IMG/VR virus record: IMGVR_UViG_3300046559_001153
Location: 62,001 to 126,000 of that record
Length of the DNA stretch: 64,000 nt
Direction: 5' to 3' (one strand)
Part shown: one piece after another, positions 1,122-30,574 of the stretch
Position numbering within the stretch: the first letter of the stretch is position 1
Layout: every line of letters begins with the position of its first letter
The notes under the pieces: model-generated
The model's input: only the letters and a program-made list of their open reading frames with translations
What the model was told of the DNA's origin: nothing
The model's database searches: none
Position numbers and translations under genes: made by a program

Positions 1122-4100
1122 ATGGCTGATCGTGTGCTGATTTCTGATCTGTCCGCGTCGAAAGACAATACTAAAAAACAGCTGAGCAAGCAGGCAGTTG
1201 CCGGTTTGCGTGTCTATCCATTTACTGCCCCGGGGATGCCGAAACCGGGTCCGTCTTTTGTCGCCGCCGCCCGACAGTGGGTTGGAGAGCCCGACGAGCC
1301 TCCGCATGTCCTGTCGAAAGATCAGATCGTTAGGAGGAAAGAAGCGTACGATAAAGCTGTGAATGAACAACTCGCTCAGTTTTATGAGGACGCGTTATAC
1401 AATCCTTTCGATATGCCCGTCGGCTTCAGGCACAAGGATCCGCCATTCCGTGAAGCGCGTTTTGGGTCTAGCCATTTCGTCCCTGGCAGTTTATGGGATA
1501 CGTCTAATATGGGCGACAGGCATAACATGCCTCCGGGCGGATATGGCCCGCGTCGTGCTCGAATCATGGTTATCGGAAAGACGCCTAACCAGGATGAGGT
1601 CAGGCATAACCGTAATCTGGTTGGCGGACCCGGTAGCTATCTTCTCGAGATGCTTCGTCAGTACGGTATTGATGACATGGCCAGCTGGTATGTGACCAGC
1701 CTGGTGAAATTTATCCCGCCGAGGGATAAGACGGCTCTCGCAGCTGAGTGGGTTCAAGACTGCGCTCCGCTGTTGCAGATGGAATTAAGAATCGTTCGAC
1801 CGGAGATCATTCTTTGTCTCGGCGCTGATGCAGTGAAGGCTGTGTTTGGTAAGGGAGTCAAGTTGGCCGAGGTTGAAGGTCGTGATGTTCCCCTTACGTA
1901 CAATTACCATTTATCCGATAGTCATTATCCATTGCGCCACACGGCGAAAGTTTTCTCAGTCGTGCACCCTGCTTTCGTCATGCGTACTCCGGCCGAGGGG
2001 CCTAGATTGGCAGCTAGTTTATCTAGGTTTTCACGAATGTTAGCTGGTGAGGATCTGGGCCAGGAAGAGGTTGACATCGACCATCGCGTCATTCGAACGA
2101 TGGACGACTTGGTACTCACTTTGCAGGACGCAGATGACGAATGTACAGATGGCCTTATTGCTGTCGATGCCGAATGGAATGGGCGTCATCCGCAAAATCG
2201 TGACGCCTATGTGAGGACAATCCAGTTCTCCTGGGCTCATGGTAAGGCTGCCAATATCGTCGTGACAGACTCGACTGGCGGGTGGTGTTTTGATGAACCG
2301 AAAGAGGAGTTGATTGCCCGATTGCTCGACTTTTTCGAGGACAAGAGAGTCGTCGGTCACTACTTGGCAACTGACTTGGAAGTCCTCATTCACTGGGGAT
2401 TGGACCTGCGTCCTCAGTATGCCGTGCCGCAGGACAATCGCGGCGATCAGCTGGCGTGGGAACGCACGCGTAATGAAGGCGGGGCCAACACGGCTTACAT
2501 GGCTCACGCTATTGAAGAGACGGGCAAGTTTGGATTGGATGCTTTATCTTTGCGGTATACGTCTGCCCCGGCGTATTGGGCGGAATTGGATCAATGGAAG
2601 AAAGCCTACTGCGCCAAGAGAAAGATTAAGCTGAAGTCGCTCGAGGGATATGGTCCATGCCCTGATGCAACCCTGGTCCCTTACGGTAATTACGATGCCG
2701 ACGTTACCCTCCGTATTTACCACAAGCTGAATGATCTGTTGGACTGCGACTACCAGGGTAACTGCTGTCGTGAAGCGTATTGGCGATCGATGTCAGTCGA
2801 GCCGGCCGTGATCGAGATCAATCGAACAGGTCTCACGCTGGATATGACACGAGCCCGTGTTCTGGCTGAGCGTTTCATGAAAGCTCGCGATGAGCTAGAA
2901 GATCGAATCAGGGCGTGGGCTAAGTGGCCTAAATTGAATCTGAGATCACCGCTTGAGGTTAAGGAATTCCTGTTTGGCGCCAAGCTGAATGGCAAGAAAT
3001 CGCCGACTGGTGGTATGGTCCGTTTGCGTCCACCAGAGGCTAAGAGCCTCAGGCTGGCACCCATATTCGATACCAGCAAACGGCCGATATCCTGGGCTGA
3101 AATTGAAGAACGTCGCGAGACGGATATCTACAACCCGTCGACTAACAAGTCGAATCTGCAGCTGCTCTTCTACGAGAACGAAAAGTACTCCGAGCAGATC
3201 CGCTGGTTTCGCGACTTCCGTTTCGTTGATCAGGTGATGAAGTCTGTGCTGCAACCGAAAGACAGACGTTACGTGAACGAGGACTCGGTTCGAGATTTCA
3301 AGGGTGGTATTCCGTGGGCCATGTGTGACGACGGACGAGTTAGAACACACATCTGGACAACTAAAGAAACGGGTCGATGGTCGTCGAGTGATCCGCCGTT
3401 GCAGAATATCAGCAAAGTTCGTGACGACGATTACGCGAGAATTCTGGGTGCTGAGAACTACAAGAACAAGATTCGAAGTATGTTCAGAGCGACCAGGGCC
3501 AGCGATCCTGGTGCCTGGGTCAATGAGGACTGTCTGCTTATTGAAAGTGACTTTACTGGCGCCGAGTTATGTATGACGGCTTGGATGTCTGGCGACGCGG
3601 CGATGATTGAGCATGTGCGTCGTAACGCATTGCCGGAGAATGACCCAGACTACTACGACATCCACAGCAATGTGGCTGTGCTGGCTTTTCGTCTGAAATG
3701 TCTTCCGACAAAAGCTGGGTTGAAGTCGTTGCCAGGGCCGACCAAGGATGGCAAGAAGTACCTGCGAGATATCGCCAAACGAATCATGTTTGGAATGTTC
3801 TACGGACGAGGTGCTGCAGCCATTTCGCGTGAGGCTCGTGAGCAGGGGGTTGATGTTTCAGTCGACGAGGCTCAGGGCGTCATGGAGACCATTTTCGATC
3901 TCTATCCGAATTTGAGACCGTTTTACGCTGAGTGCAAAGCTAGAGCTTCAAATCCTGGCTGGATCTGTACAGCTTTCGGTAGTTTCCGACGGGTCATGCC
4001 GACGCGAGATCAGGAAGTACTGTCAGAGTTTGAACGACAGTTCATGAACGTCCCCATTCAGGGCGGGGTGGCCTATGCCATGTCGCAGGGGATTACCAAT

Positions 4101-4397
4101 CTGTGCCATTATCGTGATAAGTCAGGTGATCCGGATATGTTCCGGGTCGTTTTGCAGGTGCATGACGCTGTGATTCTTGAAGTTCCGATTAGCAAGGTCG
4201 CCAGTGTTGCGCAGACTGTGATGCCGCTGTGCCTAGAAGAGCAGGTGCCGGTTTATCCGTGCACACTATCTGGCGATTCCACAGGCGACGGGCCTTACCG
4301 GTTCTCTGCAGTTACTGAGGTATTTGCCAGATGGGGTGAAAGGATAACCAAAGCAGACTGTCAAAAATACGGGTTACCCCTCGAACTGGGTGTTTAA
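1122..4397 (+). CDS. polA: Family A DNA polymerase with N-terminal uracil-DNA-glycosylase-like domain and 3'-5' exonuclease
   Basis: UDG-4-like RIMVIGKTPN..E...VGGPG and HPA; Exo I VDAEW, Exo III YGNYDAD; Pol motifs TGRWSSSDPPLQNI, ESDFTGAEL, RDIAKRIMFGMFYG, NVPIQG, LQVHDAVILEV. Confidence 0.93.
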   Translation: MADRVLISDLSASKDNTKKQLSKQAVAGLRVYPFTAPGMPKPGPSFVAAARQWVGEPDEPPHVLSKDQIVRRKEAYDKAVNEQLAQFYEDALYNPFDMPVGFRHKDPPFREARFGSSHFVPGSLWDTSNMGDRHNMPPGGYGPRRARIMVIGKTPNQDEVRHNRNLVGGPGSYLLEMLRQYGIDDMASWYVTSLVKFIPPRDKTALAAEWVQDCAPLLQMELRIVRPEIILCLGADAVKAVFGKGVKLAEVEGRDVPLTYNYHLSDSHYPLRHTAKVFSVVHPAFVMRTPAEGPRLAASLSRFSRMLAGEDLGQEEVDIDHRVIRTMDDLVLTLQDADDECTDGLIAVDAEWNGRHPQNRDAYVRTIQFSWAHGKAANIVVTDSTGGWCFDEPKEELIARLLDFFEDKRVVGHYLATDLEVLIHWGLDLRPQYAVPQDNRGDQLAWERTRNEGGANTAYMAHAIEETGKFGLDALSLRYTSAPAYWAELDQWKKAYCAKRKIKLKSLEGYGPCPDATLVPYGNYDADVTLRIYHKLNDLLDCDYQGNCCREAYWRSMSVEPAVIEINRTGLTLDMTRARVLAERFMKARDELEDRIRAWAKWPKLNLRSPLEVKEFLFGAKLNGKKSPTGGMVRLRPPEAKSLRLAPIFDTSKRPISWAEIEERRETDIYNPSTNKSNLQLLFYENEKYSEQIRWFRDFRFVDQVMKSVLQPKDRRYVNEDSVRDFKGGIPWAMCDDGRVRTHIWTTKETGRWSSSDPPLQNISKVRDDDYARILGAENYKNKIRSMFRATRASDPGAWVNEDCLLIESDFTGAELCMTAWMSGDAAMIEHVRRNALPENDPDYYDIHSNVAVLAFRLKCLPTKAGLKSLPGPTKDGKKYLRDIAKRIMFGMFYGRGAAAISREAREQGVDVSVDEAQGVMETIFDLYPNLRPFYAECKARASNPGWICTAFGSFRRVMPTRDQEVLSEFERQFMNVPIQGGVAYAMSQGITNLCHYRDKSGDPDMFRVVLQVHDAVILEVPISKVASVAQTVMPLCLEEQVPVYPCTLSGDSTGDGPYRFSAVTEVFARWGERITKADCQKYGLPLELGV

Positions 4398-22492: not shown

Positions 22493-23662
22493 ATGCTCGA
22501 TGACAGTGCGGCATTACAGATGCTCGGTGGCGGCCCGGTCATGCAAACCCGCAAGGGCCTGCACGGCGTGAGTGTTCTGTCACCCGACCCGGATAAGCAC
22601 GTTCGCGTGGGTGGCGCCAGTGACATGGGCTTCATGGTCCCGATGGCCGATCTGATGACGGGCAGTCCGCCCGGTTTTGATCAGAGCAAGGCCGGCATGG
22701 TGGTGATTAACCCCGACGAATCAGGCAAAGGGACGTTGATCGATTTCAGCAAGTTGACCCCGGATGACGTGAATAGGGCTATGCGGATGGGATCCGATCC
22801 ATCAGATGCGATGGAGAAATTGGCCAAGCTGCATCCCCCACGATCCGCAGCGGTTGTCCAGCCCAGGCAGGTCCCCGTCGAACGTGTTATTTTGAATCAG
22901 TTGCCCCGGGTAGTCCAACATCCCCAAGCCATGCTTCCGCCGGCCAATCCGCCCTCGATCAATCCACCGCGGGTGATCTTGCCGGGTTTTGCCACTGTCG
23001 GGCAACCCCAACATATTCCCCAGGAACAGCCCATGCAAGCTCAGCCTCCGATGATGATGATGGCTCCCCCTGCGTCTCAGACTTGGACGTCGCCGGCTCC
23101 GTCTGTGGCCCAACCCGCGTTGCCCAATCCCAATGCCCCGATGTACCCGGCACAGCAGCCCGACGCCTTGTCGGTGATCATGCAGACTTTGATGGGAATG
23201 CAGCAACAAATCGACTCGCTGCGTCCTCAGCAGGTTCAGCCGTTTGTGCAGGAAGCTCGTCAGCCTGATTACACTCCCCTGGAGACTGAGGCCATTGCCG
23301 ACCTGAGTGCGCTGGAAATCCCCTGGTTGACACCCGTTGTCATGCCGCCAACCGTGGACGTCATGTTCAACCTGGGTGATGCGGGAGGCGTTCGTACCAA
23401 GTACCATCACGTCGAAATCACCGACGCATTGATCCTGTTGATCTACGATTCGCGGTTCGAAATGGCCACGCAGTATACGCCGCCGTTCACCAGAACCAGG
23501 GAAGCGGGACCCCTGATTTTGCAGATTGGCAAGTCAAAATCCCAACATCAGGCCCATCATTATCCCGGCCTCGATTTCGCTTTGGGTGTTTACCACGTAA
23601 CATTGTTGATGAAGGTGGTTCTCGAGCCCGAAGACCCGGTCGATCCGGCCAACGTCATTTAG
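22493..23662 (+). CDS. Hypothetical protein with central Pro/Gln-rich linker
   Basis: AAGGAG SD; low-complexity P/Q/A segment. Confidence 0.75.
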   Translation: MLDDSAALQMLGGGPVMQTRKGLHGVSVLSPDPDKHVRVGGASDMGFMVPMADLMTGSPPGFDQSKAGMVVINPDESGKGTLIDFSKLTPDDVNRAMRMGSDPSDAMEKLAKLHPPRSAAVVQPRQVPVERVILNQLPRVVQHPQAMLPPANPPSINPPRVILPGFATVGQPQHIPQEQPMQAQPPMMMMAPPASQTWTSPAPSVAQPALPNPNAPMYPAQQPDALSVIMQTLMGMQQQIDSLRPQQVQPFVQEARQPDYTPLETEAIADLSALEIPWLTPVVMPPTVDVMFNLGDAGGVRTKYHHVEITDALILLIYDSRFEMATQYTPPFTRTREAGPLILQIGKSKSQHQAHHYPGLDFALGVYHVTLLMKVVLEPEDPVDPANVI

Positions 23663-23670
23663 AGGCGAAC

Positions 23671-23826
23671 ATGGAAAAGCGAGCAGTAATCGAAGAGGGG
23701 CGGACGCCCCGCGAACAGGAGCTGTCGCAGCTGAAGAAGGCCAGCAACTGCGCCCCGCCAGAGCTCGAACAACATACGACGCAACGGCTGGCTGACGCGG
23801 CCGAGCGATCGTCGCAGTCCAAGTAG
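23671..23826 (+). CDS. Small hypothetical protein (51 aa)
   Basis: ATG after GAGG, fills gap MEKRAVIEEGRTP... Confidence 0.5.
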   Translation: MEKRAVIEEGRTPREQELSQLKKASNCAPPELEQHTTQRLADAAERSSQSK

Positions 23827-23849
23827 CCTAAGACCGCAAGGATGCCCTG

Positions 23850-26735
23850 ATGATTGGTTCTCCGGTGCCCAGCGGTATGGGCGGTTACGGCGATCAGTTC
23901 CCTGATCCGTTTAACGACGTCGCGTCGATGAACATGCCATTGGGCATGCGATCGGCCTTGAGGACGTGCGAACGCATCTGGCTGGCATCCGGCTCGTACC
24001 GCATGGCCCAGCAGCGCATCTGCAGTTACTTCTTGACTGACATCCAGTTCAACGACTGCAGCGACGATGACCGATCTAAGTACACGGAGTTCGTCGAGGA
24101 CTTCGGTTTGCTGGAAGCCGAACAGCAGATGTACATCGATAGGGCGTGCTTCCATGGCGACGTGAAAGCCGTGACCAAGCACGGGGTTTTCAAACTTCGA
24201 GAGCTGGCTGGAAAGACTGTTGAAGTCCTGTCGCAAGGCGGCGAGTATCGACAAGCAACTTTCCAGTCGCACGGTCACCAGGCGTTATTGGAAGTGGCGT
24301 TTAGTGATGGTCGAACGATTTTGGCCACACCGGAACATGAGTGGACAGCTTTGAATTGTTCCGGCAAAAAGGTTGTCGTCCAGACAAAAGATCTGCACCA
24401 CGGGTATCGTATTCCTCGAGTTGTCGCCCCCCGACCAGAAAAAAATGAAGATTATTTTGAGGGGGTACGTCACGGTTTTGTTTTTGGTGATGGAACAGCC
24501 TACAACGATGAACGGCAGTCGGCCGCCATTTTTTATACGGCGAAAGACGACGAATTGATTCCCTATTTTGATGGCCACGGTGGGGAATTGAAACCGCGGC
24601 CATCTCGACCTGAACAGCGATATTTGCACGGTTTGCCCGGTCATTACAAGCAGCTGCCGTCTAACGATAAAAGCCCCAGCTACTGGTATGGTTTTGTTTG
24701 CGGATTTTTGGCCGCAGACGGCACTGTGGATACGTATGGTTGCGCCCTGTTGACGCAGATAGCCAAAGCGACTTTGGACGTAATTGTCGACCAGCTGCCC
24801 CGCATCGGGATGTGTGCTGGGCCAATTCGTGCTCAACGTCGAATTACCGACTTGAGAAAATACAGCGGCGAAAATGCCGTTTATGACAGCACAATTCACT
24901 TTGTCACGCTGTTGAAACGATTCATGCTGCCCCAGGATTTTCTGGTGACTAAGCACCGGATAAATTTCGAGGCGAATTTCAATTCGAAGTCGAATTATGG
25001 CAAGTACGTGCATATTAAGGCCATTCGTGAAACGGGTATCGTTGACGAGGTCTTTTGTTGTGCCGAAATGGAGACGCACACATTTGTCGTCGATCAGGCC
25101 ATTCTTACGAAGAATTGCTACGGAAATGCATTCGCTACGATCATGGTCCCGTTCAAGCGGATGCTGATGTGCCCGACAGCCAGTCGTGGATGTGGCAACC
25201 AGTACCCGTTGAAGGTCGTTTACAACGTCCCCAAATTCGCATTCAAATGGTCGCCATCGACCTGCGAATTTATCGCGACCTGCCCGCACTGCCAGTACCA
25301 CGGGCCATTCAAGGTCATCGATAATCCTGAGGACATGGAGAAACGCATCCGTGTAAAGACCTGGAATCCGCACGAGATCGAAATCCTGCACGACATGATG
25401 ACGGGCGATTGCGCCTACACATGGCGTATCCCCGAAGACTACAAGACTCAGATCCGTCGAGGAAACCTGTTCCATTTGGAACGTGTCTCCATGCCGGTTC
25501 TGCAGGCCATCAAAAAGAACCTGGTCTTTCGATTTCACGAGGATGTGCTCTTCCATATGAGGGAAGAGACGCCCAGCGGTATCCGTAACAGGGGCTGGGG
25601 AATTCCGCGGGCCCTGACGAACTTCCGTCAGGTGTACTACGTACAGGTGCTCAAACGGTACAACGAGGCCCTGGCCCTGGATTACATCATCCCCTTCCGG
25701 GTGATCACGCCGGTTGCCCGCCCGGGAGCGCTAGGCCCTGGCGCCCGAGCGTTGGATCCAATGGCCACAATGGACATGGGCGATTTCAGCTCCCAGGTCC
25801 GCAACATGATCCGCCGTCGACGACTCGACCCGGCCATGTGGTGCACGTTGCCATTCCCGATCCAGTATCAGGCCTTAGGCGGCGACGCGAGTCAGCTGGC
25901 GCCGAGCCAGTTGCTCGACCAAGGGCTCCAGCAGCTCCTGAATGACTCAGGGACGCCTCTCGAGCTGTACAACGGCTCTTTGACCGTCCAGACGGCCCCG
26001 GTGGCCCTGCGGCTGTTTGAGGCGACTAATACGCCCCTTGTACGGGCCGGCAATCAGTTCCTCAACTGGGCCATCAAGAAGGCCGCCCAGATCTTGCAGT
26101 GGGAACCTGTGAAGACCGCGAACAAGCGGGTCACCTACGCCGACGACGCATTGCGACAACAGTTGATCCTGCAGCTCATGACCGGGCAACAGGTCTCTCA
26201 GACGACCGGGCTCAGCGGTCTGGGTCTTGTCTTTACCGACGAGCAGAAGCGTCTGGCCGAAGAGGCCCGCGAGCAGGCCGATATCCGTACAAAGGTGCAA
26301 GACGAGATGGACGAAGCCGGTTTGTCCAAGGCCATGGTGCAGGGACCACAGGCTGGCGGGCAGCCTGGGGCGGCCGGTGGAGCAGCTCCTCCGGGTGGTG
26401 CGGCCCCTCCGGGCGGTGCTGGCGGTGCCAGTGCGTCTGGGCCTTCCCCGATCCCCGGGCAGTCAGACGCCATGCAGCCGGCAACAGCCTACTTGCAATC
26501 CAGGCCACCCGGCGGTCAGATCGACCTGCAAAGCTTCCAGCAGTCGGCCGATCAACTTGTTTCGGCCCTGGCGTCGCTACCTCACGAACAGCGGCAAAAG
26601 CAATTGCGAGAGCTGCGTGAGGGCGATCCGTCGATGCACCAGCTCGTCAGTGGTGGATTACAAAAAGCCAGACGTCAACAGAGCAGTCAGGGACAACAGG
26701 ATTCATCTCAGCAACCACCTCCCCAGGGGCAATGA
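23850..26735 (+). CDS. Probable portal protein, intein-containing precursor (about 638 aa after splicing)
   Basis: Spliced junction IDRA-CYGNAF matches portal 'GNAF/Y' motif; LFHMREE...RGWGIPRAL matches portal 'H.R...G.SP/GIP' motif; Cys insert and G/P/Q-rich tail. Confidence 0.65.
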   Translation: MIGSPVPSGMGGYGDQFPDPFNDVASMNMPLGMRSALRTCERIWLASGSYRMAQQRICSYFLTDIQFNDCSDDDRSKYTEFVEDFGLLEAEQQMYIDRACFHGDVKAVTKHGVFKLRELAGKTVEVLSQGGEYRQATFQSHGHQALLEVAFSDGRTILATPEHEWTALNCSGKKVVVQTKDLHHGYRIPRVVAPRPEKNEDYFEGVRHGFVFGDGTAYNDERQSAAIFYTAKDDELIPYFDGHGGELKPRPSRPEQRYLHGLPGHYKQLPSNDKSPSYWYGFVCGFLAADGTVDTYGCALLTQIAKATLDVIVDQLPRIGMCAGPIRAQRRITDLRKYSGENAVYDSTIHFVTLLKRFMLPQDFLVTKHRINFEANFNSKSNYGKYVHIKAIRETGIVDEVFCCAEMETHTFVVDQAILTKNCYGNAFATIMVPFKRMLMCPTASRGCGNQYPLKVVYNVPKFAFKWSPSTCEFIATCPHCQYHGPFKVIDNPEDMEKRIRVKTWNPHEIEILHDMMTGDCAYTWRIPEDYKTQIRRGNLFHLERVSMPVLQAIKKNLVFRFHEDVLFHMREETPSGIRNRGWGIPRALTNFRQVYYVQVLKRYNEALALDYIIPFRVITPVARPGALGPGARALDPMATMDMGDFSSQVRNMIRRRRLDPAMWCTLPFPIQYQALGGDASQLAPSQLLDQGLQQLLNDSGTPLELYNGSLTVQTAPVALRLFEATNTPLVRAGNQFLNWAIKKAAQILQWEPVKTANKRVTYADDALRQQLILQLMTGQQVSQTTGLSGLGLVFTDEQKRLAEEAREQADIRTKVQDEMDEAGLSKAMVQGPQAGGQPGAAGGAAPPGGAAPPGGAGGASASGPSPIPGQSDAMQPATAYLQSRPPGGQIDLQSFQQSADQLVSALASLPHEQRQKQLRELREGDPSMHQLVSGGLQKARRQQSSQGQQDSSQQPPPQGQ
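24147..25115 (+). mobile_element. Class 1 intein with LAGLIDADG homing endonuclease (323 aa)
   Basis: N-term CFHGD, block B ATPEH, LAGLIDADG helices HGFVFGDGT and CGFLAADGT, C-term THTFVVDQAILTKN followed by +1 Cys. Confidence 0.92.
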
Positions 26736-27487
26736 TGCCGAAAGTATTTCTGGTCGTACCATCATACGGCCACTACGACTACGTTTACGAAACTGTCCGG
26801 AGCGCATTCGAATGCACCCCGGACATTTCTGTTTGTATATTTGATGATGCGACGCCACCGGAGTTAGCACCCAGTCCTGAGTTTTGGGACAACTGGAATC
26901 AATTCGACCATACTCGAACAGGGTTTGTTACCTTTGACAAAAATGGCGGCCTTACGAGGTCTTGGAACGCCGGCTTACAGTTGGCAAGACAGGGCAAATT
27001 CGATTACGCGATCTGCGGCAATAGCGATCTGATCTTCTCACCCGGATGGTGGGAACCGATTCAGAAAGCGCTGGACGATGGCTGGGCCTTAGCTGGTCCT
27101 GTATCGAACGCCGCGGGAACTACCATCGGCTGTAGACAGGGCATTCTCAACTACCTGCCCGACTACAAAGTGTCAGATCAGACAAAAGACATTGAAGAGA
27201 CATCCGCTAGATTGAAAGCCAAAGGCGACCCGATCAATTCTCCGCTCAACGGATTTTGCCTGTGCGCCAAGACGGCTACCTGGTGGGACAATGCGTTTGA
27301 CGCTGATCACGTTTTCGATCCCCAGTACAAGATGACGCTCAACGAGGATCGTTTGCAGAAACGCTGGCGAGCGAAGGGTCTCAAATTCTGTGTCGTGCCC
27401 ACCAGTTTCGTTCTTCATTATCGATCGGTTACACGAGGGACCAGATATGTCCAAGGGCAGTGGTTGCGTAAAGGAGAAATATCGTGA
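26732..27487 (+). CDS. Glycosyltransferase family 2
   Basis: VVPSYG..DY..ETVRS, IFDDAT, NGGLTRSWNAG, GNSDL, GPVSN, FVLHYRS. Confidence 0.85.
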   Translation: MMPKVFLVVPSYGHYDYVYETVRSAFECTPDISVCIFDDATPPELAPSPEFWDNWNQFDHTRTGFVTFDKNGGLTRSWNAGLQLARQGKFDYAICGNSDLIFSPGWWEPIQKALDDGWALAGPVSNAAGTTIGCRQGILNYLPDYKVSDQTKDIEETSARLKAKGDPINSPLNGFCLCAKTATWWDNAFDADHVFDPQYKMTLNEDRLQKRWRAKGLKFCVVPTSFVLHYRSVTRGTRYVQGQWLRKGEIS

Positions 27488-27984
27488 GTGACGAGATTGA
27501 AGACAAATGTCCGCATTGTGGCGATTCATACAGCGAGATTCGTTCCTGCGATCCGTTAGCCGTATTTGAGTGTGGTTCAGAGACATGGCGTGGCACGTCA
27601 TCCAGGCAGACTGACTATTGTCGCATTCGCCAGCTCGAGCTGGCGATCAAACTTGTCTGCTCTCAGAAGGCCGACGACAAATGCTGGATGGATCTGAAGC
27701 CATTGGCCGAGATGGTCGGGGTCAAGCTCGACATGCACGTCGGTGACAAGGCGGCTATGCTTGAGAACTGCAACCGGTACGTGAACAACGTGTGCATAGC
27801 GGGCGGCCCCTGGCCCACGTATAGTGAGCTGGTATCGATGTTGTTCAAGTGCGGGCGCCACGCGCCAGATTGCCCGAGCAAGTCTTACGGCCCGGGCGAT
27901 GATCCGGATGAATCAAATTGTGACTGCGGTTGGGTCTCGATCCGCGACAAACTGTGGCCAGCAATAACTGAAAACAAGCAGTGA
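27484..27984 (+). CDS. Cys-rich hypothetical protein
   Basis: CPHC, CGS, CWMD, CDCGW; GTGA overlap. Confidence 0.6.
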   Translation: MSDEIEDKCPHCGDSYSEIRSCDPLAVFECGSETWRGTSSRQTDYCRIRQLELAIKLVCSQKADDKCWMDLKPLAEMVGVKLDMHVGDKAAMLENCNRYVNNVCIAGGPWPTYSELVSMLFKCGRHAPDCPSKSYGPGDDPDESNCDCGWVSIRDKLWPAITENKQ

Positions 27985-28658
27985 CGAGGGAGAGCATCAT
28001 GTCGCTGACCGTGTACACATGCATTCTCGGATCGATCGGCGACAAGCTCAGACCACCATCGTGCAAACTGCCTGGCATACATCTGGTCGCCTTTACTGAT
28101 CAGACAACGCCCGTCGATGGGTGGGAAATTCGTCGGCCGTTTCCGATGGCCGGATTGTCTCCGCGGCGTTTGGCTCGTTACCACAAGATCAACCCGCACA
28201 TCGTTCTGCCGCACCACGGTGACTCGATCTGGCTGGATGGGAGTTTTCAGCTGCGTGATTCGCCGATCGATTTTCTGTCGCATTTCCAAGAGGACATCGA
28301 GCTTGGTTGTTACAACCACACGGAACGCAGATGCGTTTACTCCGAATACCGCAGCTGTATCAGGCTTCGCAAAGACGACATCGGGCTGATGACCGCTCAG
28401 GTCGCCAGGTACCGCGAGGCGAAGTACCCGGAGAATGCCGGTCTGACAGAGACGGGCATCATTTACAGGAAGAACTGCCCGTCCGTGCAGTCGTTCAACA
28501 CGCTGTGGTGGGCTGAAGTAGCTAAGGGCAGCCACCGCGATCAGCTCTCGTTTGATTATTGTCTCTGGAAACAGTCGTGGGTCTGTCCATTGAAGGTTGT
28601 CCGTTTCCCTGGTTCTGTTTACTTGAATCCTTTAACCGCTTTCTACCGTCACCGTTAA
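27981..28658 (+). CDS. DUF616/TOD1-like glycosyltransferase domain protein
   Basis: VYTCI.G..D.L, AFTD, ARYHKINPH, SIWLDGS, H..R.CVY.E, ETG.I.R, RDQLSFDY. Confidence 0.8.
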   Translation: MTRESIMSLTVYTCILGSIGDKLRPPSCKLPGIHLVAFTDQTTPVDGWEIRRPFPMAGLSPRRLARYHKINPHIVLPHHGDSIWLDGSFQLRDSPIDFLSHFQEDIELGCYNHTERRCVYSEYRSCIRLRKDDIGLMTAQVARYREAKYPENAGLTETGIIYRKNCPSVQSFNTLWWAEVAKGSHRDQLSFDYCLWKQSWVCPLKVVRFPGSVYLNPLTAFYRHR

Positions 28659-28670
28659 TGAAAGGTTCTC

Positions 28671-29093
28671 ATGTCTGTTTATGACCAGATGATTGAAGAA
28701 GTGATCAAAATGCAACCGCTTCAAATGCAGAGCACATGGGCAGAATCACACAAGCGTCTGCATGGCGAGCTTTTCGCGTATTGCTCGCCTGGGCGAGGAT
28801 TTATGTCGTGTAGACCAGATAATAAAGTGTGCGGTTGTCTCACCCAGATCAGAGCTAGCCATTGGTTTGAAGACCCACCACGTAAGTTCGCGTGGACGGA
28901 CGAACTGACGAAGCTGATTGCCGAAGATGATCGTCTGCCGTCTGATATGGGTGACTTGGTAAGGAAATGGCCTGGCATGTCGGCCGATGAACGCCGAGCC
29001 ACGCTCATTCCTTTGGCCGAATGGCAAGAACGTCTGGATAAAGAACTCAATCGCACTACTCCGGTCTTCGGCCAGTTCAATAATCCGCATTAA
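28671..29093 (+). CDS. Hypothetical protein, paralog family A member 1
   Basis: CGCLT and AEWQERLDKE motifs shared with 29106, 44371, 48070. Confidence 0.75.
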   Translation: MSVYDQMIEEVIKMQPLQMQSTWAESHKRLHGELFAYCSPGRGFMSCRPDNKVCGCLTQIRASHWFEDPPRKFAWTDELTKLIAEDDRLPSDMGDLVRKWPGMSADERRATLIPLAEWQERLDKELNRTTPVFGQFNNPH

Positions 29094-29105
29094 CGAAAGG
29101 ATCTC

Positions 29106-29516
29106 ATGTCTGTTTACGACCAGATGATTGACGCAGTGATCAATATGCCCGCTCGCGAGGTCCAACGACTTTGGGGCAGTGGCTACAACGAGGGGGCTGG
29201 GTATCTCTTCAGTTACTGCTCCCCCGGCCGAGACGATGAGGACTGTTCTTTCGCTGGGGACTGTTCTTTCGAAAGGGCGTTCTGCGGTTGCCTGACCCAG
29301 GTCAAAGCATACGACGCAGTGGCTTACACAGAGGAATTAACGCGAGAGATCCGCGCTGATTGGCGCTTGCCAACAAGCATGGTCACGTTTTTACTGGGTT
29401 GGGACAAGTTGGTGCCGGACGAACGACGGACAAAGATGCAGCCGTTTGCTGAATGGCAAGAACGTCTGGATAAAGAGTTCAATCGTCCGACTCCGGTCTT
29501 CCAACTGGCCGAATAG
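29106..29516 (+). CDS. Hypothetical protein, paralog family A member 2 (tandem duplicate)
   Basis: Near-identical nucleotide 5' and 3' ends to 28671 gene. Confidence 0.75.
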   Translation: MSVYDQMIDAVINMPAREVQRLWGSGYNEGAGYLFSYCSPGRDDEDCSFAGDCSFERAFCGCLTQVKAYDAVAYTEELTREIRADWRLPTSMVTFLLGWDKLVPDERRTKMQPFAEWQERLDKEFNRPTPVFQLAE

Positions 29517-29533
29517 CCCCTTATCATGCGATC

Positions 29534-30574
29534 ATGGCAATCGGGCTGTACGTATCATACCGCCAGTCAGAACAGTGCTTCGCCGCGATTCAGCTGGCCG
29601 AGCTGCTTACCTCATTTGGCTCCCAGGTTGTAATTTACTCGCCCCAGTCCCCGCAAGCCGTTGGCTCAAGCTGGGACCGGGGCGTGTTGTCGCCCAAGAA
29701 ACTCCCATTTGAGACGGTGATGGGAGCCTTCGACTGGTGGATCTGGTTTGAACACATTCCTCCGCATTTAGAATTGATCTGCGATAAATCGAGGAACACG
29801 CTTGTTCCATCGTGGCACAAGCTGACAGCCAAGCACGAGTCGTCCATGAATCTCTACTCAGAGATTGTGGCACCGACGCTGGCGGTCAAGCGGGCTCTCG
29901 ATCAGAAGGAATTCACTTTGCCCGTGCATTGTGTTCCGTGGGATGCCCCGGGCGAGATACAAGCCATTCACCCAAAGCCGGCTGGCTATTACTGCCGGAT
30001 GCCCGAGCGTTTTACCGCTAAAGATACCATTCGGTTGGCCGTGATCGATCATTTGCTGGCGGAAGGATATCCAGTCACACTGGTCAAACCGATAACCACT
30101 TTGCCGCAGAACATTCTCAAAATCTTCGATAAGTGGTCGAAACTCCACAAGCAATTTACGCTGTTGCCTGCGTCAACCGTCTTGGATCACCTGGCCAGGA
30201 TGGCTAAATGCAGGTGGTCAGTTATTCTCGATTCGGCCGACAACCTCGGATATGCGTGTCTTGAATCTCTCTCGCTCGGGATGCCTGTCATTTGTTACGA
30301 TATCCCGCCGAGAGATGAGTACTTGAAACAGGGCCAAAACAGCATTCTGCTCGACTGCAATCTCGAGCTCAGCTATCTGGGCGCCCCTCGAGCGATCGTT
30401 GTGGCTGACCCTAACGCCGAAGAGTTGAGGGACTCCCTTTGGACCTCAACCCGAACAAGAATGCAGTCGATCATCAACCAGTCATTGTCAGGATTTAAGG
30501 ACACGCCGGATATCCTGATCGCACGACGAGAGGGCTTCAAGGCTCACTGGGAGCACTTGGCCAGATCTACTTAA
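29534..30574 (+). CDS. GT-B fold (family 4-like) glycosyltransferase
   Basis: DNLGYACLESLSLGMPVICYDIP..DEYLKQGQNSILL matches the E-x7-E GT4 signature region. Confidence 0.75.
   Translation: MAIGLYVSYRQSEQCFAAIQLAELLTSFGSQVVIYSPQSPQAVGSSWDRGVLSPKKLPFETVMGAFDWWIWFEHIPPHLELICDKSRNTLVPSWHKLTAKHESSMNLYSEIVAPTLAVKRALDQKEFTLPVHCVPWDAPGEIQAIHPKPAGYYCRMPERFTAKDTIRLAVIDHLLAEGYPVTLVKPITTLPQNILKIFDKWSKLHKQFTLLPASTVLDHLARMAKCRWSVILDSADNLGYACLESLSLGMPVICYDIPPRDEYLKQGQNSILLDCNLELSYLGAPRAIVVADPNAEELRDSLWTSTRTRMQSIINQSLSGFKDTPDILIARREGFKAHWEHLARST

What the first reader, a model, noticed from the sequence alone, without database searches (positions are those of the whole stretch)
24147..25115. Homing-endonuclease intein inside a portal-like protein, with non-canonical penultimate Lys
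Complete intein (C1, TxxH, two LAGLIDADG helices, ends K-N, +1 Cys) inserted precisely in the conserved D-x-x-C-Y-G-N-A-F portal motif. Phage inteins are usually in terminases or nucleotide/replication enzymes; a structural dodecamer host makes capsid assembly splicing-dependent. Penultimate His is replaced by Lys and block F carries Cys where Asp is usual. The segment looks more A/T-rich than its flanks by eye, consistent with recent invasion.
Basis: partly seen in the sequence, partly recalled or inferred. Interest (0 to 1): 0.65.

Follow-up and report, generated by a model that had tools for sequence, protein, structure and literature searches.

The report
Homing-endonuclease intein in a phage portal gene
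A 323-residue self-splicing intein that carries its own DNA-cutting homing enzyme sits in the most conserved motif of the portal (DNA entry channel) gene of a 224-kb soil phage. It is real and intact, but portal inteins and the missing penultimate histidine are already known, so only its unusual set of catalytic residues is worth a bench test.

Summary
Window 24147-25115 encodes a 323-aa insertion in a 961-aa ORF (23850-26735, +). It starts Cys-Phe-His-Gly-Asp and ends Thr-Lys-Asn, followed by Cys-Tyr-Gly-Asn.

- **Precise insertion:** about 120 listed relatives (665 matched) of roughly 640 aa run straight through the site.
- **Intein fold:** the AlphaFold2 model (pLDDT 97.6) matches endonuclease-bearing inteins (TliVMA, PI-PfuI, PI-SceI).
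- **Host is a portal:** a natural intein-less relative folds as a phage portal (Z 16-20 against solved portals). A distant homolog, Salmonella phage Arash gp204, is a virion protein annotated as portal.
- **Spread:** at least 157 metagenomic proteins carry a homologous intein. All 119 listed full-length ones checked have it at this same portal site.
- **Relatives in deposited phages:** all listed ones lie in ribonucleotide reductase genes.

It coexists here with invariant Cys1 and TxxH. The penultimate residue is free (Gly 77, Ser 22, Lys 14, Arg 6 of 125).

The low GC3 is real, but three relatives show the same deficit, so it does not prove recent invasion. Portal inteins are already documented. 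Verdict: a new member of a known kind, of moderate interest.

The parts
23850..26735 (+). Portal precursor gene, 961 aa, stop codon included
   Evidence: Single open frame. The N-terminus aligns with homologs from their first residues.
23850..24146 (+). N-extein, 99 aa, ending ...Y-I-D-R-A
   Evidence: Collinear with the N-termini of intein-less portals P0003, P0004 and P0010 and of Arash gp204.
24147..25115 (+). Intein, 323 aa: HINT splicing domain with an inserted LAGLIDADG endonuclease
   Evidence: AF2 pLDDT 97.6, pTM 0.94. Foldseek: 7qsu E 9e-16, 1dq3, PI-SceI. Pfam Intein_splicing E 1.4e-5. Absent from the intein-less relatives of about 640 aa (665 matched, 120 listed).
24147..24185 (+). 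Block A, with Cys1 at 24147-24149
   Evidence: Cys1 in 125 of 125 related inteins. TIGR01445 intein_Nterm matches aa 1-65, E 0.005.
24303..24347 (+). Block B: Thr61 (B:7), His64 (B:10), Trp66 (B:12)
   Evidence: All three in 125 of 125. The block register is fixed by the profile alignment to DnaE inteins, where T-x-x-H-x-F aligns with T-x-x-H-x-W.
24462..24497 (+). LAGLIDADG motif 1, with Asp115
   Evidence: Asp in 123 of 125. Helix 101-115 in the model.
24681..24728 (+). LAGLIDADG motif 2, with Asp191
   Evidence: Asp in 122 of 125. Helix 177-191 in the model. Aligns to the I-Tsp061I motif.
25041..25091 (+). Block F: Cys304 (F:4), Cys305, His311
   Evidence: Cys304 in 125 of 125, Cys305 in 115 of 125, His311 in 114 of 125.
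25092..25118 (+). Block G: Thr321 (G:5), Lys322 (G:6), Asn323 (G:7), and Cys+1 at 25116-25118
   Evidence: G:5 is Thr or Ser in 124 of 125. G:6 is G77, S22, K14, R6, A4, C1, H1. G:7 is N103, Q22. Cys+1 in nearly all; Thr in three.
25116..26732 (+). C-extein, 539 aa: portal core plus a low-complexity Gly/Pro/Gln-rich tail
   Evidence: 53% identical to P0003. 26-28% identical to Arash gp204 and Vibrio phage D181, E 1e-41. The P0003 model has a portal fold.

Best explanation
Window 24147-25115 is a functional, mobile intein in the portal gene of a complete 224-kb soil or rhizosphere phage with direct terminal repeats.

**Protein level (inferred).** The 961-aa precursor splices itself.
1. Cys1 attacks the Ala-Cys peptide bond, helped by Thr61 and His64.
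2. The N-extein passes to Cys+1.
3. Asn323 cyclises and releases the intein.
4. The exteins rejoin into a portal of about 638 aa, restoring the conserved ...D-R-A-C-Y-G-N-A-F motif in the N-terminal (wing) part.

Portal ring assembly, and therefore packaging, would wait on splicing.

**Active-site variation.** Block F Cys304 stands where class 1 inteins have the coordinating Asp. The family does not need a penultimate His. The invariant Thr at G:5 and the block F His311 are the likely helpers.

**DNA level (inferred).** The freed two-motif LAGLIDADG endonuclease cuts the intein-less CYGN-coding site of related co-infecting phages. Recombinational repair copies the intein in. This explains why one intein lineage sits at one site in many divergent portals.

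**Origin.** The lineage is related to inteins of phage and archaeal ribonucleotide reductases.

**Shown versus inferred.** Anatomy, fold, precise insertion, residue conservation, host fold and distribution are shown here. Splicing, DNA cleavage and the order of the chemical steps are inferred.
For: - **Precise insertion:** intein-less relatives are collinear across the site, and the +1 Cys is native to them in at least 90% of 119.
- **Intein fold:** pLDDT 97.6. Top structural matches are endonuclease-bearing inteins, then I-DmoI-type endonucleases.
- **Family signal:** 95 of 125 relatives hit Pfam Intein_splicing and 35 hit LAGLIDADG_3.
- **Catalytic conservation:** Cys1, Thr B:7, His B:10, Trp B:12 and Cys F:4 are invariant in 125. 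The terminal residue is Asn or Gln in all. The two LAGLIDADG Asp are kept in 123 and 122 of 125.
- **Host is a portal:** Foldseek and VIA-align return only portals; 210 chains score Z of 8 or more, with a top Z of 19.9. Arash gp204 was found in virions with 32 unique peptides (PMC10585845).
- **Mobility:**
  - The intein is more conserved than its host: mean 57% identity against 39% for the portal core over 117 pairs.
  - At least 13 gains or losses are needed on a tree of 238 portals.
  - The window sits beside a clade of 116 portals in which 100 lack the intein.
  - Intein GC3 is below every other ORF in the window.
- **Repair gene:** a UvsX-like recombinase lies in the window.
- **RNR kinship:** Thermobifida phage P318, 36% identical, has the same residue set. 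So does an archaeal RNR intein.
Against: - No experiment shows splicing or DNA cleavage.
- The window copy scores below Pfam's gathering threshold (25.4 against 35.8 bits).
- The invariant Trp-Cys-Thr triplet is the class 3 signature, so the first nucleophile might be Cys304 rather than Cys1.
- Contigs from four independent soil runs show only the intein-bearing allele, with no intein-less joint. Present-day homing in this population is therefore not seen, although contigs drop rare variants.
- The lower GC3 recurs in three relatives and tracks host GC. It may reflect weaker codon selection rather than transfer.
- The tree sampling is biased: the intein-less rows were chosen by similarity to the window and the intein-bearing rows by intein similarity.
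Confidence: 0.8

Rival explanations
1. The intein splices by the class 3 route, or can use either route. Block F Cys304, held by His64, Thr321 and Trp66, attacks the N-terminal junction and forms a block F branched thioester. The N-extein then passes to Cys+1. Cys1 would be dispensable or a back-up nucleophile.
For: - Trp B:12 and Cys F:4 are invariant, and G:5 is Thr or Ser in 124 of 125 relatives.
- This triplet defines class 3 and co-varies strongly with that mechanism (PMC2807308).
- The penultimate His had little effect in the class 3 prototype (PMC2807308), which fits the free G:6 position here.
- Tori et al. noted 3 of 37 triplet-bearing inteins with Ser1 or Cys1 whose mechanism was still open (PMC2807308).
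Against: - Cys1 and Thr B:7 are also invariant, which implies selection on the class 1 first step.
- Class 3 inteins lack the position 1 nucleophile by definition and usually lack Thr B:7 (PMC6195587).
- Class 3 inteins have Ser or Thr at +1 with one known exception (PMC5222942); here it is Cys.
- The family profile matches class 1 DnaE and gp41-1 inteins (E 3e-4 to 7e-3) better than class 3 DnaB inteins (E 0.2-0.4), though all these matches are weak.
- Grafting the triplet onto a class 1 intein did not give class 3 splicing (PMC7664689).
Confidence: 0.15
2. The intein is an old, vertically inherited resident whose endonuclease no longer homes. It persists only because precise loss is rare and splicing is harmless.
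For: - The nearest relative is only 72% identical.
- Intein GC3 has largely followed host GC in four genomes.
- No intein-less allele appears in four runs.
- Intein and extein identities correlate (Spearman 0.41).
- Intein presence is clustered on the tree: 13 changes against about 80 for shuffled labels.
Against: - The LAGLIDADG Asp residues are kept in 122-123 of 125, and the endonuclease domain is modelled at pLDDT above 94. Degenerate endonucleases normally decay or are deleted.
- The intein is more conserved than an essential structural host protein (57% against 39%).
- Several gains or losses are still required.
Confidence: 0.15
3. The insertion does not splice. It is either a permanent decoration of the portal or an auto-cleaving Hint domain that only removes the first 99 residues.
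For: Only the lack of experimental data, plus the non-canonical penultimate Lys and block F Cys.
Against: - Every residue needed for full splicing is present and invariant, including the terminal Asn or Gln and the +1 nucleophile.
- The N-extein is conserved in intein-less homologs and is part of the fold.
- The insertion interrupts an invariant motif at a helix-to-strand junction modelled at pLDDT about 95.
Confidence: 0.03

Closest known systems
Portal-protein inteins of actinobacteriophages and prophages (cluster C1 mycobacteriophage PORT inteins; SPP1 Gp6-like portal inteins)
   Same: An intein with a LAGLIDADG endonuclease interrupts a phage portal gene. The penultimate His is often lost in phage inteins and replaced by Gly, Lys or Ser (PMC5050341, PMC4760082, 10.1101/2025.01.02.630785).
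   Different: The host here is a different portal sequence family: no Pfam, PHROG or NCBIfam portal model matches it. The host phages are soil phages of about 220-240 kb. No match to the window's intein was listed in a portal gene among 50,697 deposited phage genomes; every listed match under a named gene was in a ribonucleotide reductase gene.
Ribonucleotide reductase inteins of phages and archaea (Thermobifida phage P318, Staphylococcus Silviavirus, Rheinheimera Barba phages, a Nitrososphaerota RNR)
   Same: These are the closest sequence relatives outside the portal alleles, at 22-36% identity over the whole intein. P318 shares the residue set: Cys1, T-P-x-H-x-W, F-C-C in block F, L-T-G-(N/Q) and Cys+1.
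   Different: They sit at a different insertion site and host, before the catalytic Cys of the reductase. The staphylococcal copy has Tyr, not Trp, at B:12.
Class 3 inteins (mycobacteriophage Bethlehem DnaB, Msm DnaBi1, Mch DnaB1)
   Same: The Trp B:12 / Cys F:4 / Thr G:5 triplet, an association with phages, and tolerance of changes at the penultimate position (PMC2807308).
   Different: Class 3 inteins lack a nucleophile at position 1, usually lack Thr B:7 and have Ser or Thr at +1. This family has invariant Cys1, Thr B:7 and Cys+1.
PI-SceI, PI-PfuI and TliVMA endonuclease-bearing inteins
   Same: The same two-domain architecture; these are the best structural matches (TM 0.60-0.70 on the query, E 1e-11 to 9e-16).
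   Different: Sequence identity is only 9-16%. At 323 aa this intein is smaller, without the extra DNA-recognition region of PI-SceI. Those inteins have canonical Asp F:4 and a His-Asn end (established knowledge of those families).

Membership tests
Intein (HINT protein-splicing domain) | Nucleophile at position 1 and block B T-x-x-H | tested here: met
   Cys1, Thr61 and His64, each 125 of 125 in relatives.
Intein (HINT protein-splicing domain) | C-terminal Asn (or Gln) followed by Cys, Ser or Thr at +1 | tested here: met
   Asn323 | Cys. Family: N 103, Q 22; +1 is Cys, or Thr in three.
Intein (HINT protein-splicing domain) | Penultimate His (common, not obligatory) | tested here: not met
   Lys322. 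Only 1 of 125 relatives has His. Known to be dispensable in some inteins (PMC5050341, PMC7664689).
Intein (HINT protein-splicing domain) | HINT fold | tested here: met
   AF2 pLDDT 97.6. Foldseek probability 1.00 to TliVMA, PI-PfuI, PI-SceI and the Mxe GyrA intein.
Intein (HINT protein-splicing domain) | In-frame insertion absent from orthologs, with collinear exteins | tested here: met
Intein (HINT protein-splicing domain) | Score above Pfam PF14890 or TIGR01445 curated cut-offs | tested here: not met
   25.4 against 35.8 bits, and 17.8 against 24.5 bits. 95 of 125 relatives match PF14890 at E of 1e-3 or better, best 7e-11.
Intein (HINT protein-splicing domain) | Actual excision and extein ligation | not testable with these tools
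   Needs expression or virion proteomics.
LAGLIDADG homing endonuclease (two-motif, monomeric) | Two LAGLIDADG helices, each ending in a catalytic acidic residue | tested here: met
   Asp115 and Asp191, kept in 123 and 122 of 125. Helices 101-115 and 177-191.
LAGLIDADG homing endonuclease (two-motif, monomeric) | Endonuclease fold | tested here: met
   Foldseek matches to I-DmoI and I-Tsp061I, E about 1e-5 to 1e-6, and to the endonuclease domains of PI-SceI and PI-PfuI.
LAGLIDADG homing endonuclease (two-motif, monomeric) | Site-specific cleavage of the intein-less allele | not testable with these tools
   Needs a cleavage assay.
Class 3 inteins | Trp B:12 / Cys F:4 / Thr G:5 triplet | tested here: met
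   Trp66, Cys304 and Thr321. Trp and Cys are invariant, and Thr or Ser is present in 124 of 125. Register checked against DnaE inteins.
Class 3 inteins | No Cys, Ser or Thr at intein position 1 | tested here: not met
   Cys1 in 125 of 125. Definition in PMC2807308.
Class 3 inteins | Ser or Thr at +1 (one known exception) | tested here: not met
   Cys+1. PMC5222942.
Class 3 inteins | Block F branched intermediate; splicing independent of residue 1 | not testable with these tools
   Needs mutagenesis and mass spectrometry.
Tailed-phage portal protein | Portal fold (wing, stem, clip, crown) | tested here: met
   Tested on the natural intein-less relative P0003, 62% identical in the core. VIA-align Z 16-20 with 270-385 residues aligned, to lambda, Pa193, E217, HFTV1, G20c, T4, phiKZ and others. 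All top Foldseek hits are portals.
Tailed-phage portal protein | Match to a curated portal sequence family | tested here: not met
   No Pfam, PHROG or NCBIfam hit for either extein or for P0003. No PDB sequence hit.
Tailed-phage portal protein | Present in virions | not testable with these tools
   Indirect only: the distant homolog Arash gp204 (26% identity, E 7e-41) was found in virions by LC-MS.

The most novel reading that the evidence does not exclude
This intein lineage keeps every class 1 catalytic residue (Cys1, Thr B:7, His B:10, Cys+1). It also keeps an invariant class 3 Trp-Cys-Thr triplet, and it has given up the penultimate His. It could therefore be a living intermediate between class 1 and class 3. 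It might start splicing from either Cys1 or Cys F:4, or it might be gated by redox chemistry among the four active-site cysteines (Cys1, Cys304, Cys305, Cys+1). Either way, phage head assembly would depend on that chemistry. This would give a natural test case for whether class 3 inteins diverged from a class 1 phage intein or arose by convergence.
Probability: 0.15. Interest if true: 0.7.

Novelty: new member of a known kind. Interest (0 to 1): 0.35.

Why it matters
**For annotation.** The work identifies a large, previously unnamed portal family: 665 relatives matched, from phage contigs of up to about 240 kb (the window's phage is from soil and rhizosphere samples), with no Pfam or PHROG model. 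More than 150 of its members are 900-1000 aa only because of this intein. Gene callers and family models will mis-size or mis-name them; one was labelled ribonucleotide reductase by its source.

**For intein biology.** The family provides 125 natural sequence variants of an active site that combines the class 1 nucleophiles with the class 3 triplet and a free penultimate position. That is a ready-made data set for asking what the block F Cys does when Cys1 is present.

**For phage biology.** It is a further example of an essential structural gene held hostage by a mobile element. This is already an established theme.

Tried and rejected
- **Sequence family scans of the exteins:** Pfam, PHROGs and NCBIfam gave nothing. 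A PDB sequence search gave only low-complexity noise. The portal assignment therefore rests on fold and on a distant annotated homolog.
- **PDB sequence search with the single intein:** nothing significant. The family profile gave only weak block A/B matches.
- **Joined extein:** I did not build, search or fold it. The exteins were searched separately by reference, and the natural intein-less relative P0003 was folded instead.
- **Search for an intein-less allele in the same population:** Logan contigs of four independent soil or rhizosphere runs were identical to the window. One contig bridges both junctions with the intein present, and there were no joints. Contigs cannot show rare variants, so this is not evidence of absence.
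- **A contig break at 24145-24171 in one run:** it does not fit a branch at the junction, because the flank contig runs 25 nt into the intein. I rejected it as evidence of polymorphism.
- **Low GC3 as proof of recent invasion:** rejected after three relatives showed the same deficit with GC3 tracking the host.
- **Tubulin in the window's own genome:** none found, although one relative has a tubulin gene near its portal.
- **Host of the second intein in the genome:** could not be named.
- **Antisense ORFs** 24285-25556 and 23655-24278: no family hits; treated as spurious.
- **Papers not held:** Tori and Perler 2011 (PMC3133030) and Brace et al. 2010 (PMC2923505), which tested triplet-bearing inteins that have Ser1 or Cys1. 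What they concluded is not used here.
- **Model coordinates:** these are not exposed, so the Cys1-Cys304 distance could not be measured.
Full report
**1. What is in the sequence**

The finding lies inside one open frame, window 23850-26735 on the + strand, 961 aa. Residues 100-422 (window 24147-25115, 323 aa) begin C-F-H-G-D and end L-T-K-N, and the next residue is Cys. The DNA junctions read GAT AGG GCG | TGC TTC CAT and ACG AAG AAT | TGC TAC GGA AAT GCA TTC.

- Thr61-x-x-His64.
- LAGLIDADG motifs at aa 106-117 (Asp115) and aa 179-194 (Asp191).
- Cys304 at the block F position where Asp is usual.
- Lys322 as the penultimate residue.

**2. It is an insertion, not a domain of the host**

Salmonella phage Arash gp204 and a Vibrio phage D181 protein are 26-28% identical to the C-extein (E 1e-41). 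Both run straight through the site.

A word search with the C-extein alone matched 665 relatives; the 120 listed are mostly about 640 aa and 45-56% identical, from contigs of up to 236 kb. In an alignment of 119 of them the site reads R-D-R-x-C-Y-G-N-x-F. Tyr is invariant, and Cys, Gly and Asn are each kept in at least 90%. Close relatives with and without the insertion align without any other gap at the junction.

**3. It is an intein with a homing endonuclease**

- Pfam gives only a sub-threshold Intein_splicing match for the window copy (E 1.4e-5; 25.4 against 35.8 bits).
- TIGR01445 matches aa 1-65 weakly.
- An AlphaFold2 model built on 125 related inteins is very confident (mean pLDDT 97.6, pTM 0.94).
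- Foldseek against the PDB returns endonuclease-bearing inteins first: TliVMA 7qsu (E 9e-16), PI-PfuI and PI-SceI. I-DmoI-type LAGLIDADG enzymes and mini-inteins follow.
- Across the family, 95 of 125 members match Intein_splicing and 35 match LAGLIDADG_3.

**4. The host is a portal protein**

Each extein was searched separately by reference, and neither matched Pfam, PHROGs, NCBIfam or PDB sequences.

I therefore folded a natural intein-less relative, P0003, which is 62% identical to the window in the conserved core.
- Every top Foldseek hit is a phage portal.
- VIA-align gives Z 16-20 over 270-385 aligned residues to portals of lambda, Pa193, E217, HFTV1, G20c, T4, phiKZ and others. In all, 210 chains score Z of 8 or more.
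- Arash gp204 was found in purified virions with 32 unique peptides and is annotated as portal (PMC10585845).

The insertion point corresponds to P0003 residue 105. This is the end of helix 92-106 and the start of strand 108-114, modelled at pLDDT about 95. It lies well upstream of the long helix, disordered stretch and helix at 272-341, which I read as stem-clip-stem. The intein therefore sits in the N-terminal wing part; this placement is an inference from the order of secondary-structure elements.

**5. Genome and habitat**

The window is bases 62001-126000 of a 224,270-bp virus record with direct terminal repeats, rated complete. Neighbouring genes include:
- a family A DNA polymerase with an N-terminal uracil-DNA-glycosylase domain;
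- a UvsX-like recombinase;
- several glycosyltransferases;
- a non-specific endonuclease.

The stretch occurs in at least 20 soil and rhizosphere sequencing runs.

**6. The intein is a widespread allele**

A word search restricted to the intein, but sized for the whole protein, found 157 proteins. Nearly all the listed ones are 900-1000 aa portals, and the 119 full-length ones checked carry the intein at exactly this site.

Residue counts across 125 aligned inteins:

| Position | Residues (of 125) |
|---|---|
| Cys1 | 125 |
| Thr B:7 | 125 |
| His B:10 | 125 |
| Trp B:12 | 125 |
| Cys F:4 | 125 |
| G:5 | Thr or Ser, 124 |
| G:6 (penultimate) | Gly 77, Ser 22, Lys 14, Arg 6, Ala 4, Cys 1, His 1 |
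| G:7 (last) | Asn 103, Gln 22 |
| LAGLIDADG Asp, motif 1 | 123 |
| LAGLIDADG Asp, motif 2 | 122 |

The penultimate Lys is therefore one of several accepted residues, not a peculiarity of this copy. The endonuclease looks maintained by selection.

**7.

Cys at F:4, Trp at B:12 and Thr at G:5 together form the W-C-T triplet that defines class 3 inteins, in which the block F Cys is the initiating nucleophile (PMC2807308, PMC4031507, PMC6195587). The block register was checked against DnaE inteins, where T-x-x-H-x-F aligns with T-x-x-H-x-W here.

This family nevertheless keeps features that class 3 inteins lack (PMC2807308, PMC6195587, PMC5222942):
- Cys1;
- Thr B:7;
- Cys+1.

Tori et al. counted 3 of 37 triplet-bearing inteins that have Ser1 or Cys1 and left their mechanism open. 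The follow-up papers are not held in the library. The family profile is weakly closer to class 1 DnaE and gp41-1 inteins than to class 3 DnaB inteins.

I therefore file it as a class 1-type intein carrying the triplet, and keep a class 3-like or dual route as a rival at about 0.15.

**8. Origin and mobility**

- **Relatives in deposited phages.** Among 50,697 deposited phage genomes, every listed match under a named gene lies in a ribonucleotide reductase gene, and none was listed in a portal gene. Thermobifida phage P318 is the closest at 36% identity. P318 and an archaeal RNR intein share the Cys1 / T-P-x-H-x-W / F-C-C / L-T-G-(N/Q) / Cys+1 pattern. This points to a shared lineage and a past change of host gene.
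- **Intein versus host conservation.** Over 117 intein-bearing portals, the intein is more conserved relative to the window (mean 57% identity) than the portal core around it (39%). Some pairs reach 64-65% against 36%.
- **Tree of portal cores.** On a FastTree of 238 portal cores (118 with the intein), at least 13 gains or losses are needed, against about 80 for shuffled labels. The window is sister to a clade of 116 in which 100 lack the intein. Rows were sampled unevenly, so these are qualitative results.
- **Base composition.** The intein's GC3 (0.526) is below that of every other ORF tested in the window. Three relatives in hosts of 53, 62 and 69% GC show the same deficit, with intein GC3 rising along with the host: 0.53, 0.72 and 0.87. 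The signal fits a foreign or less codon-optimised element but does not date the invasion.
- **Population check.** Contigs from four independent runs are identical to the window and carry the intein. No intein-less joint was seen.

**9. Comparison with what is known**

Portal inteins are established:
- 14 in SPP1 Gp6-like portals of prophages (PMC4760082);
- 6 in cluster C1 mycobacteriophages (PMC5050341);
- five polyphyletic groups in actinobacteriophages (10.1101/2025.01.02.630785).

Loss of the penultimate His in phage inteins, including replacement by Lys, is also described (PMC5050341).

What is new here is a new host family, a new insertion site, a new habitat and the size of the allele set. 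The finding is a new member of a known kind.

**10. Verdict**

| Item | Verdict |
|---|---|
| Observation | Confirmed |
| Best explanation (active intein with endonuclease in a portal gene, class 1 chemistry with a class 3-like triplet) | Confidence 0.8 |
| Interest | 0.35 |

The one thread worth bench time is the role of the block F Cys when Cys1 is present.

Noticed in passing
Outside the window: G000:C1 about 187.5-190.1 kb (L005:37-2649): A second intein in the same genome. The ORF is 871 aa and the intein spans aa 166-547, starting C-I-W-D-P and ending S-H-N | C (a canonical His-Asn end). It matches LAGLIDADG_3 at E 1.6e-6. The host protein has no Pfam, PHROG or deposited-phage match.
   Followed up: partly
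Related protein P0148 (1315 aa), residues about 40-390: The same portal family has a second intein site. P0148 carries another intein ending T-T-S-N | C-E-Y-I-F, just before the Cys of the conserved W-C-E-Y-I motif near residue 42, as well as the CYGN-site intein. P0161 and P0241 (1324-1336 aa) also have about 380 extra N-terminal residues.
   Followed up: partly
window 25170-25295 (portal residues 441-481): A four-Cys pattern lies just after the intein site: C-P ... C, then C-P-x-C. It is invariant even against Arash and Vibrio D181, and looks like a zinc ribbon inserted in the portal wing.
   Followed up: no
window 1122-4397 (+): A 1091-aa family A DNA polymerase with an N-terminal uracil-DNA-glycosylase-superfamily domain and a 3'-5' exonuclease domain in one protein.
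   Followed up: no
L006:12422-13750 (contig of the closest intein-bearing relative, P0135): A tubulin-family gene (PF00091) lies 3.5 kb downstream of the portal in this relative. The window's own genome has no PF00091 match.
   Followed up: partly
window 26732-30574 (+): A run of glycosyltransferase genes (GT2, TOD1/MUCI70-like, GT1) sits directly downstream of the portal. The same order is kept in relatives L006 and L009.
   Followed up: no
window 26340-26470 (portal C-terminal tail): The portal ends in a Gly/Pro/Ala/Gln-rich low-complexity tail of about 130 aa that is longer than in Arash or D181. The equivalent region of P0003 is modelled as disordered.
   Followed up: no
window 24285-25556 (-) and 23655-24278 (-): Long antisense ORFs (423 and 207 aa) overlap the intein and N-extein. 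Neither has a family match, so they are treated as chance open frames in GC-rich DNA.
   Followed up: yes
Related proteins P0127 and P0128: Their source labels two metagenomic proteins 'ribonucleoside-diphosphate reductase alpha chain'. P0128 has this portal family's N-extein, so the name was apparently transferred from the intein. P0127's N-terminal region does not resemble the portal, and it has lost Cys1, the block F Cys and the terminal Asn, so it looks like a decayed copy.
   Followed up: partly
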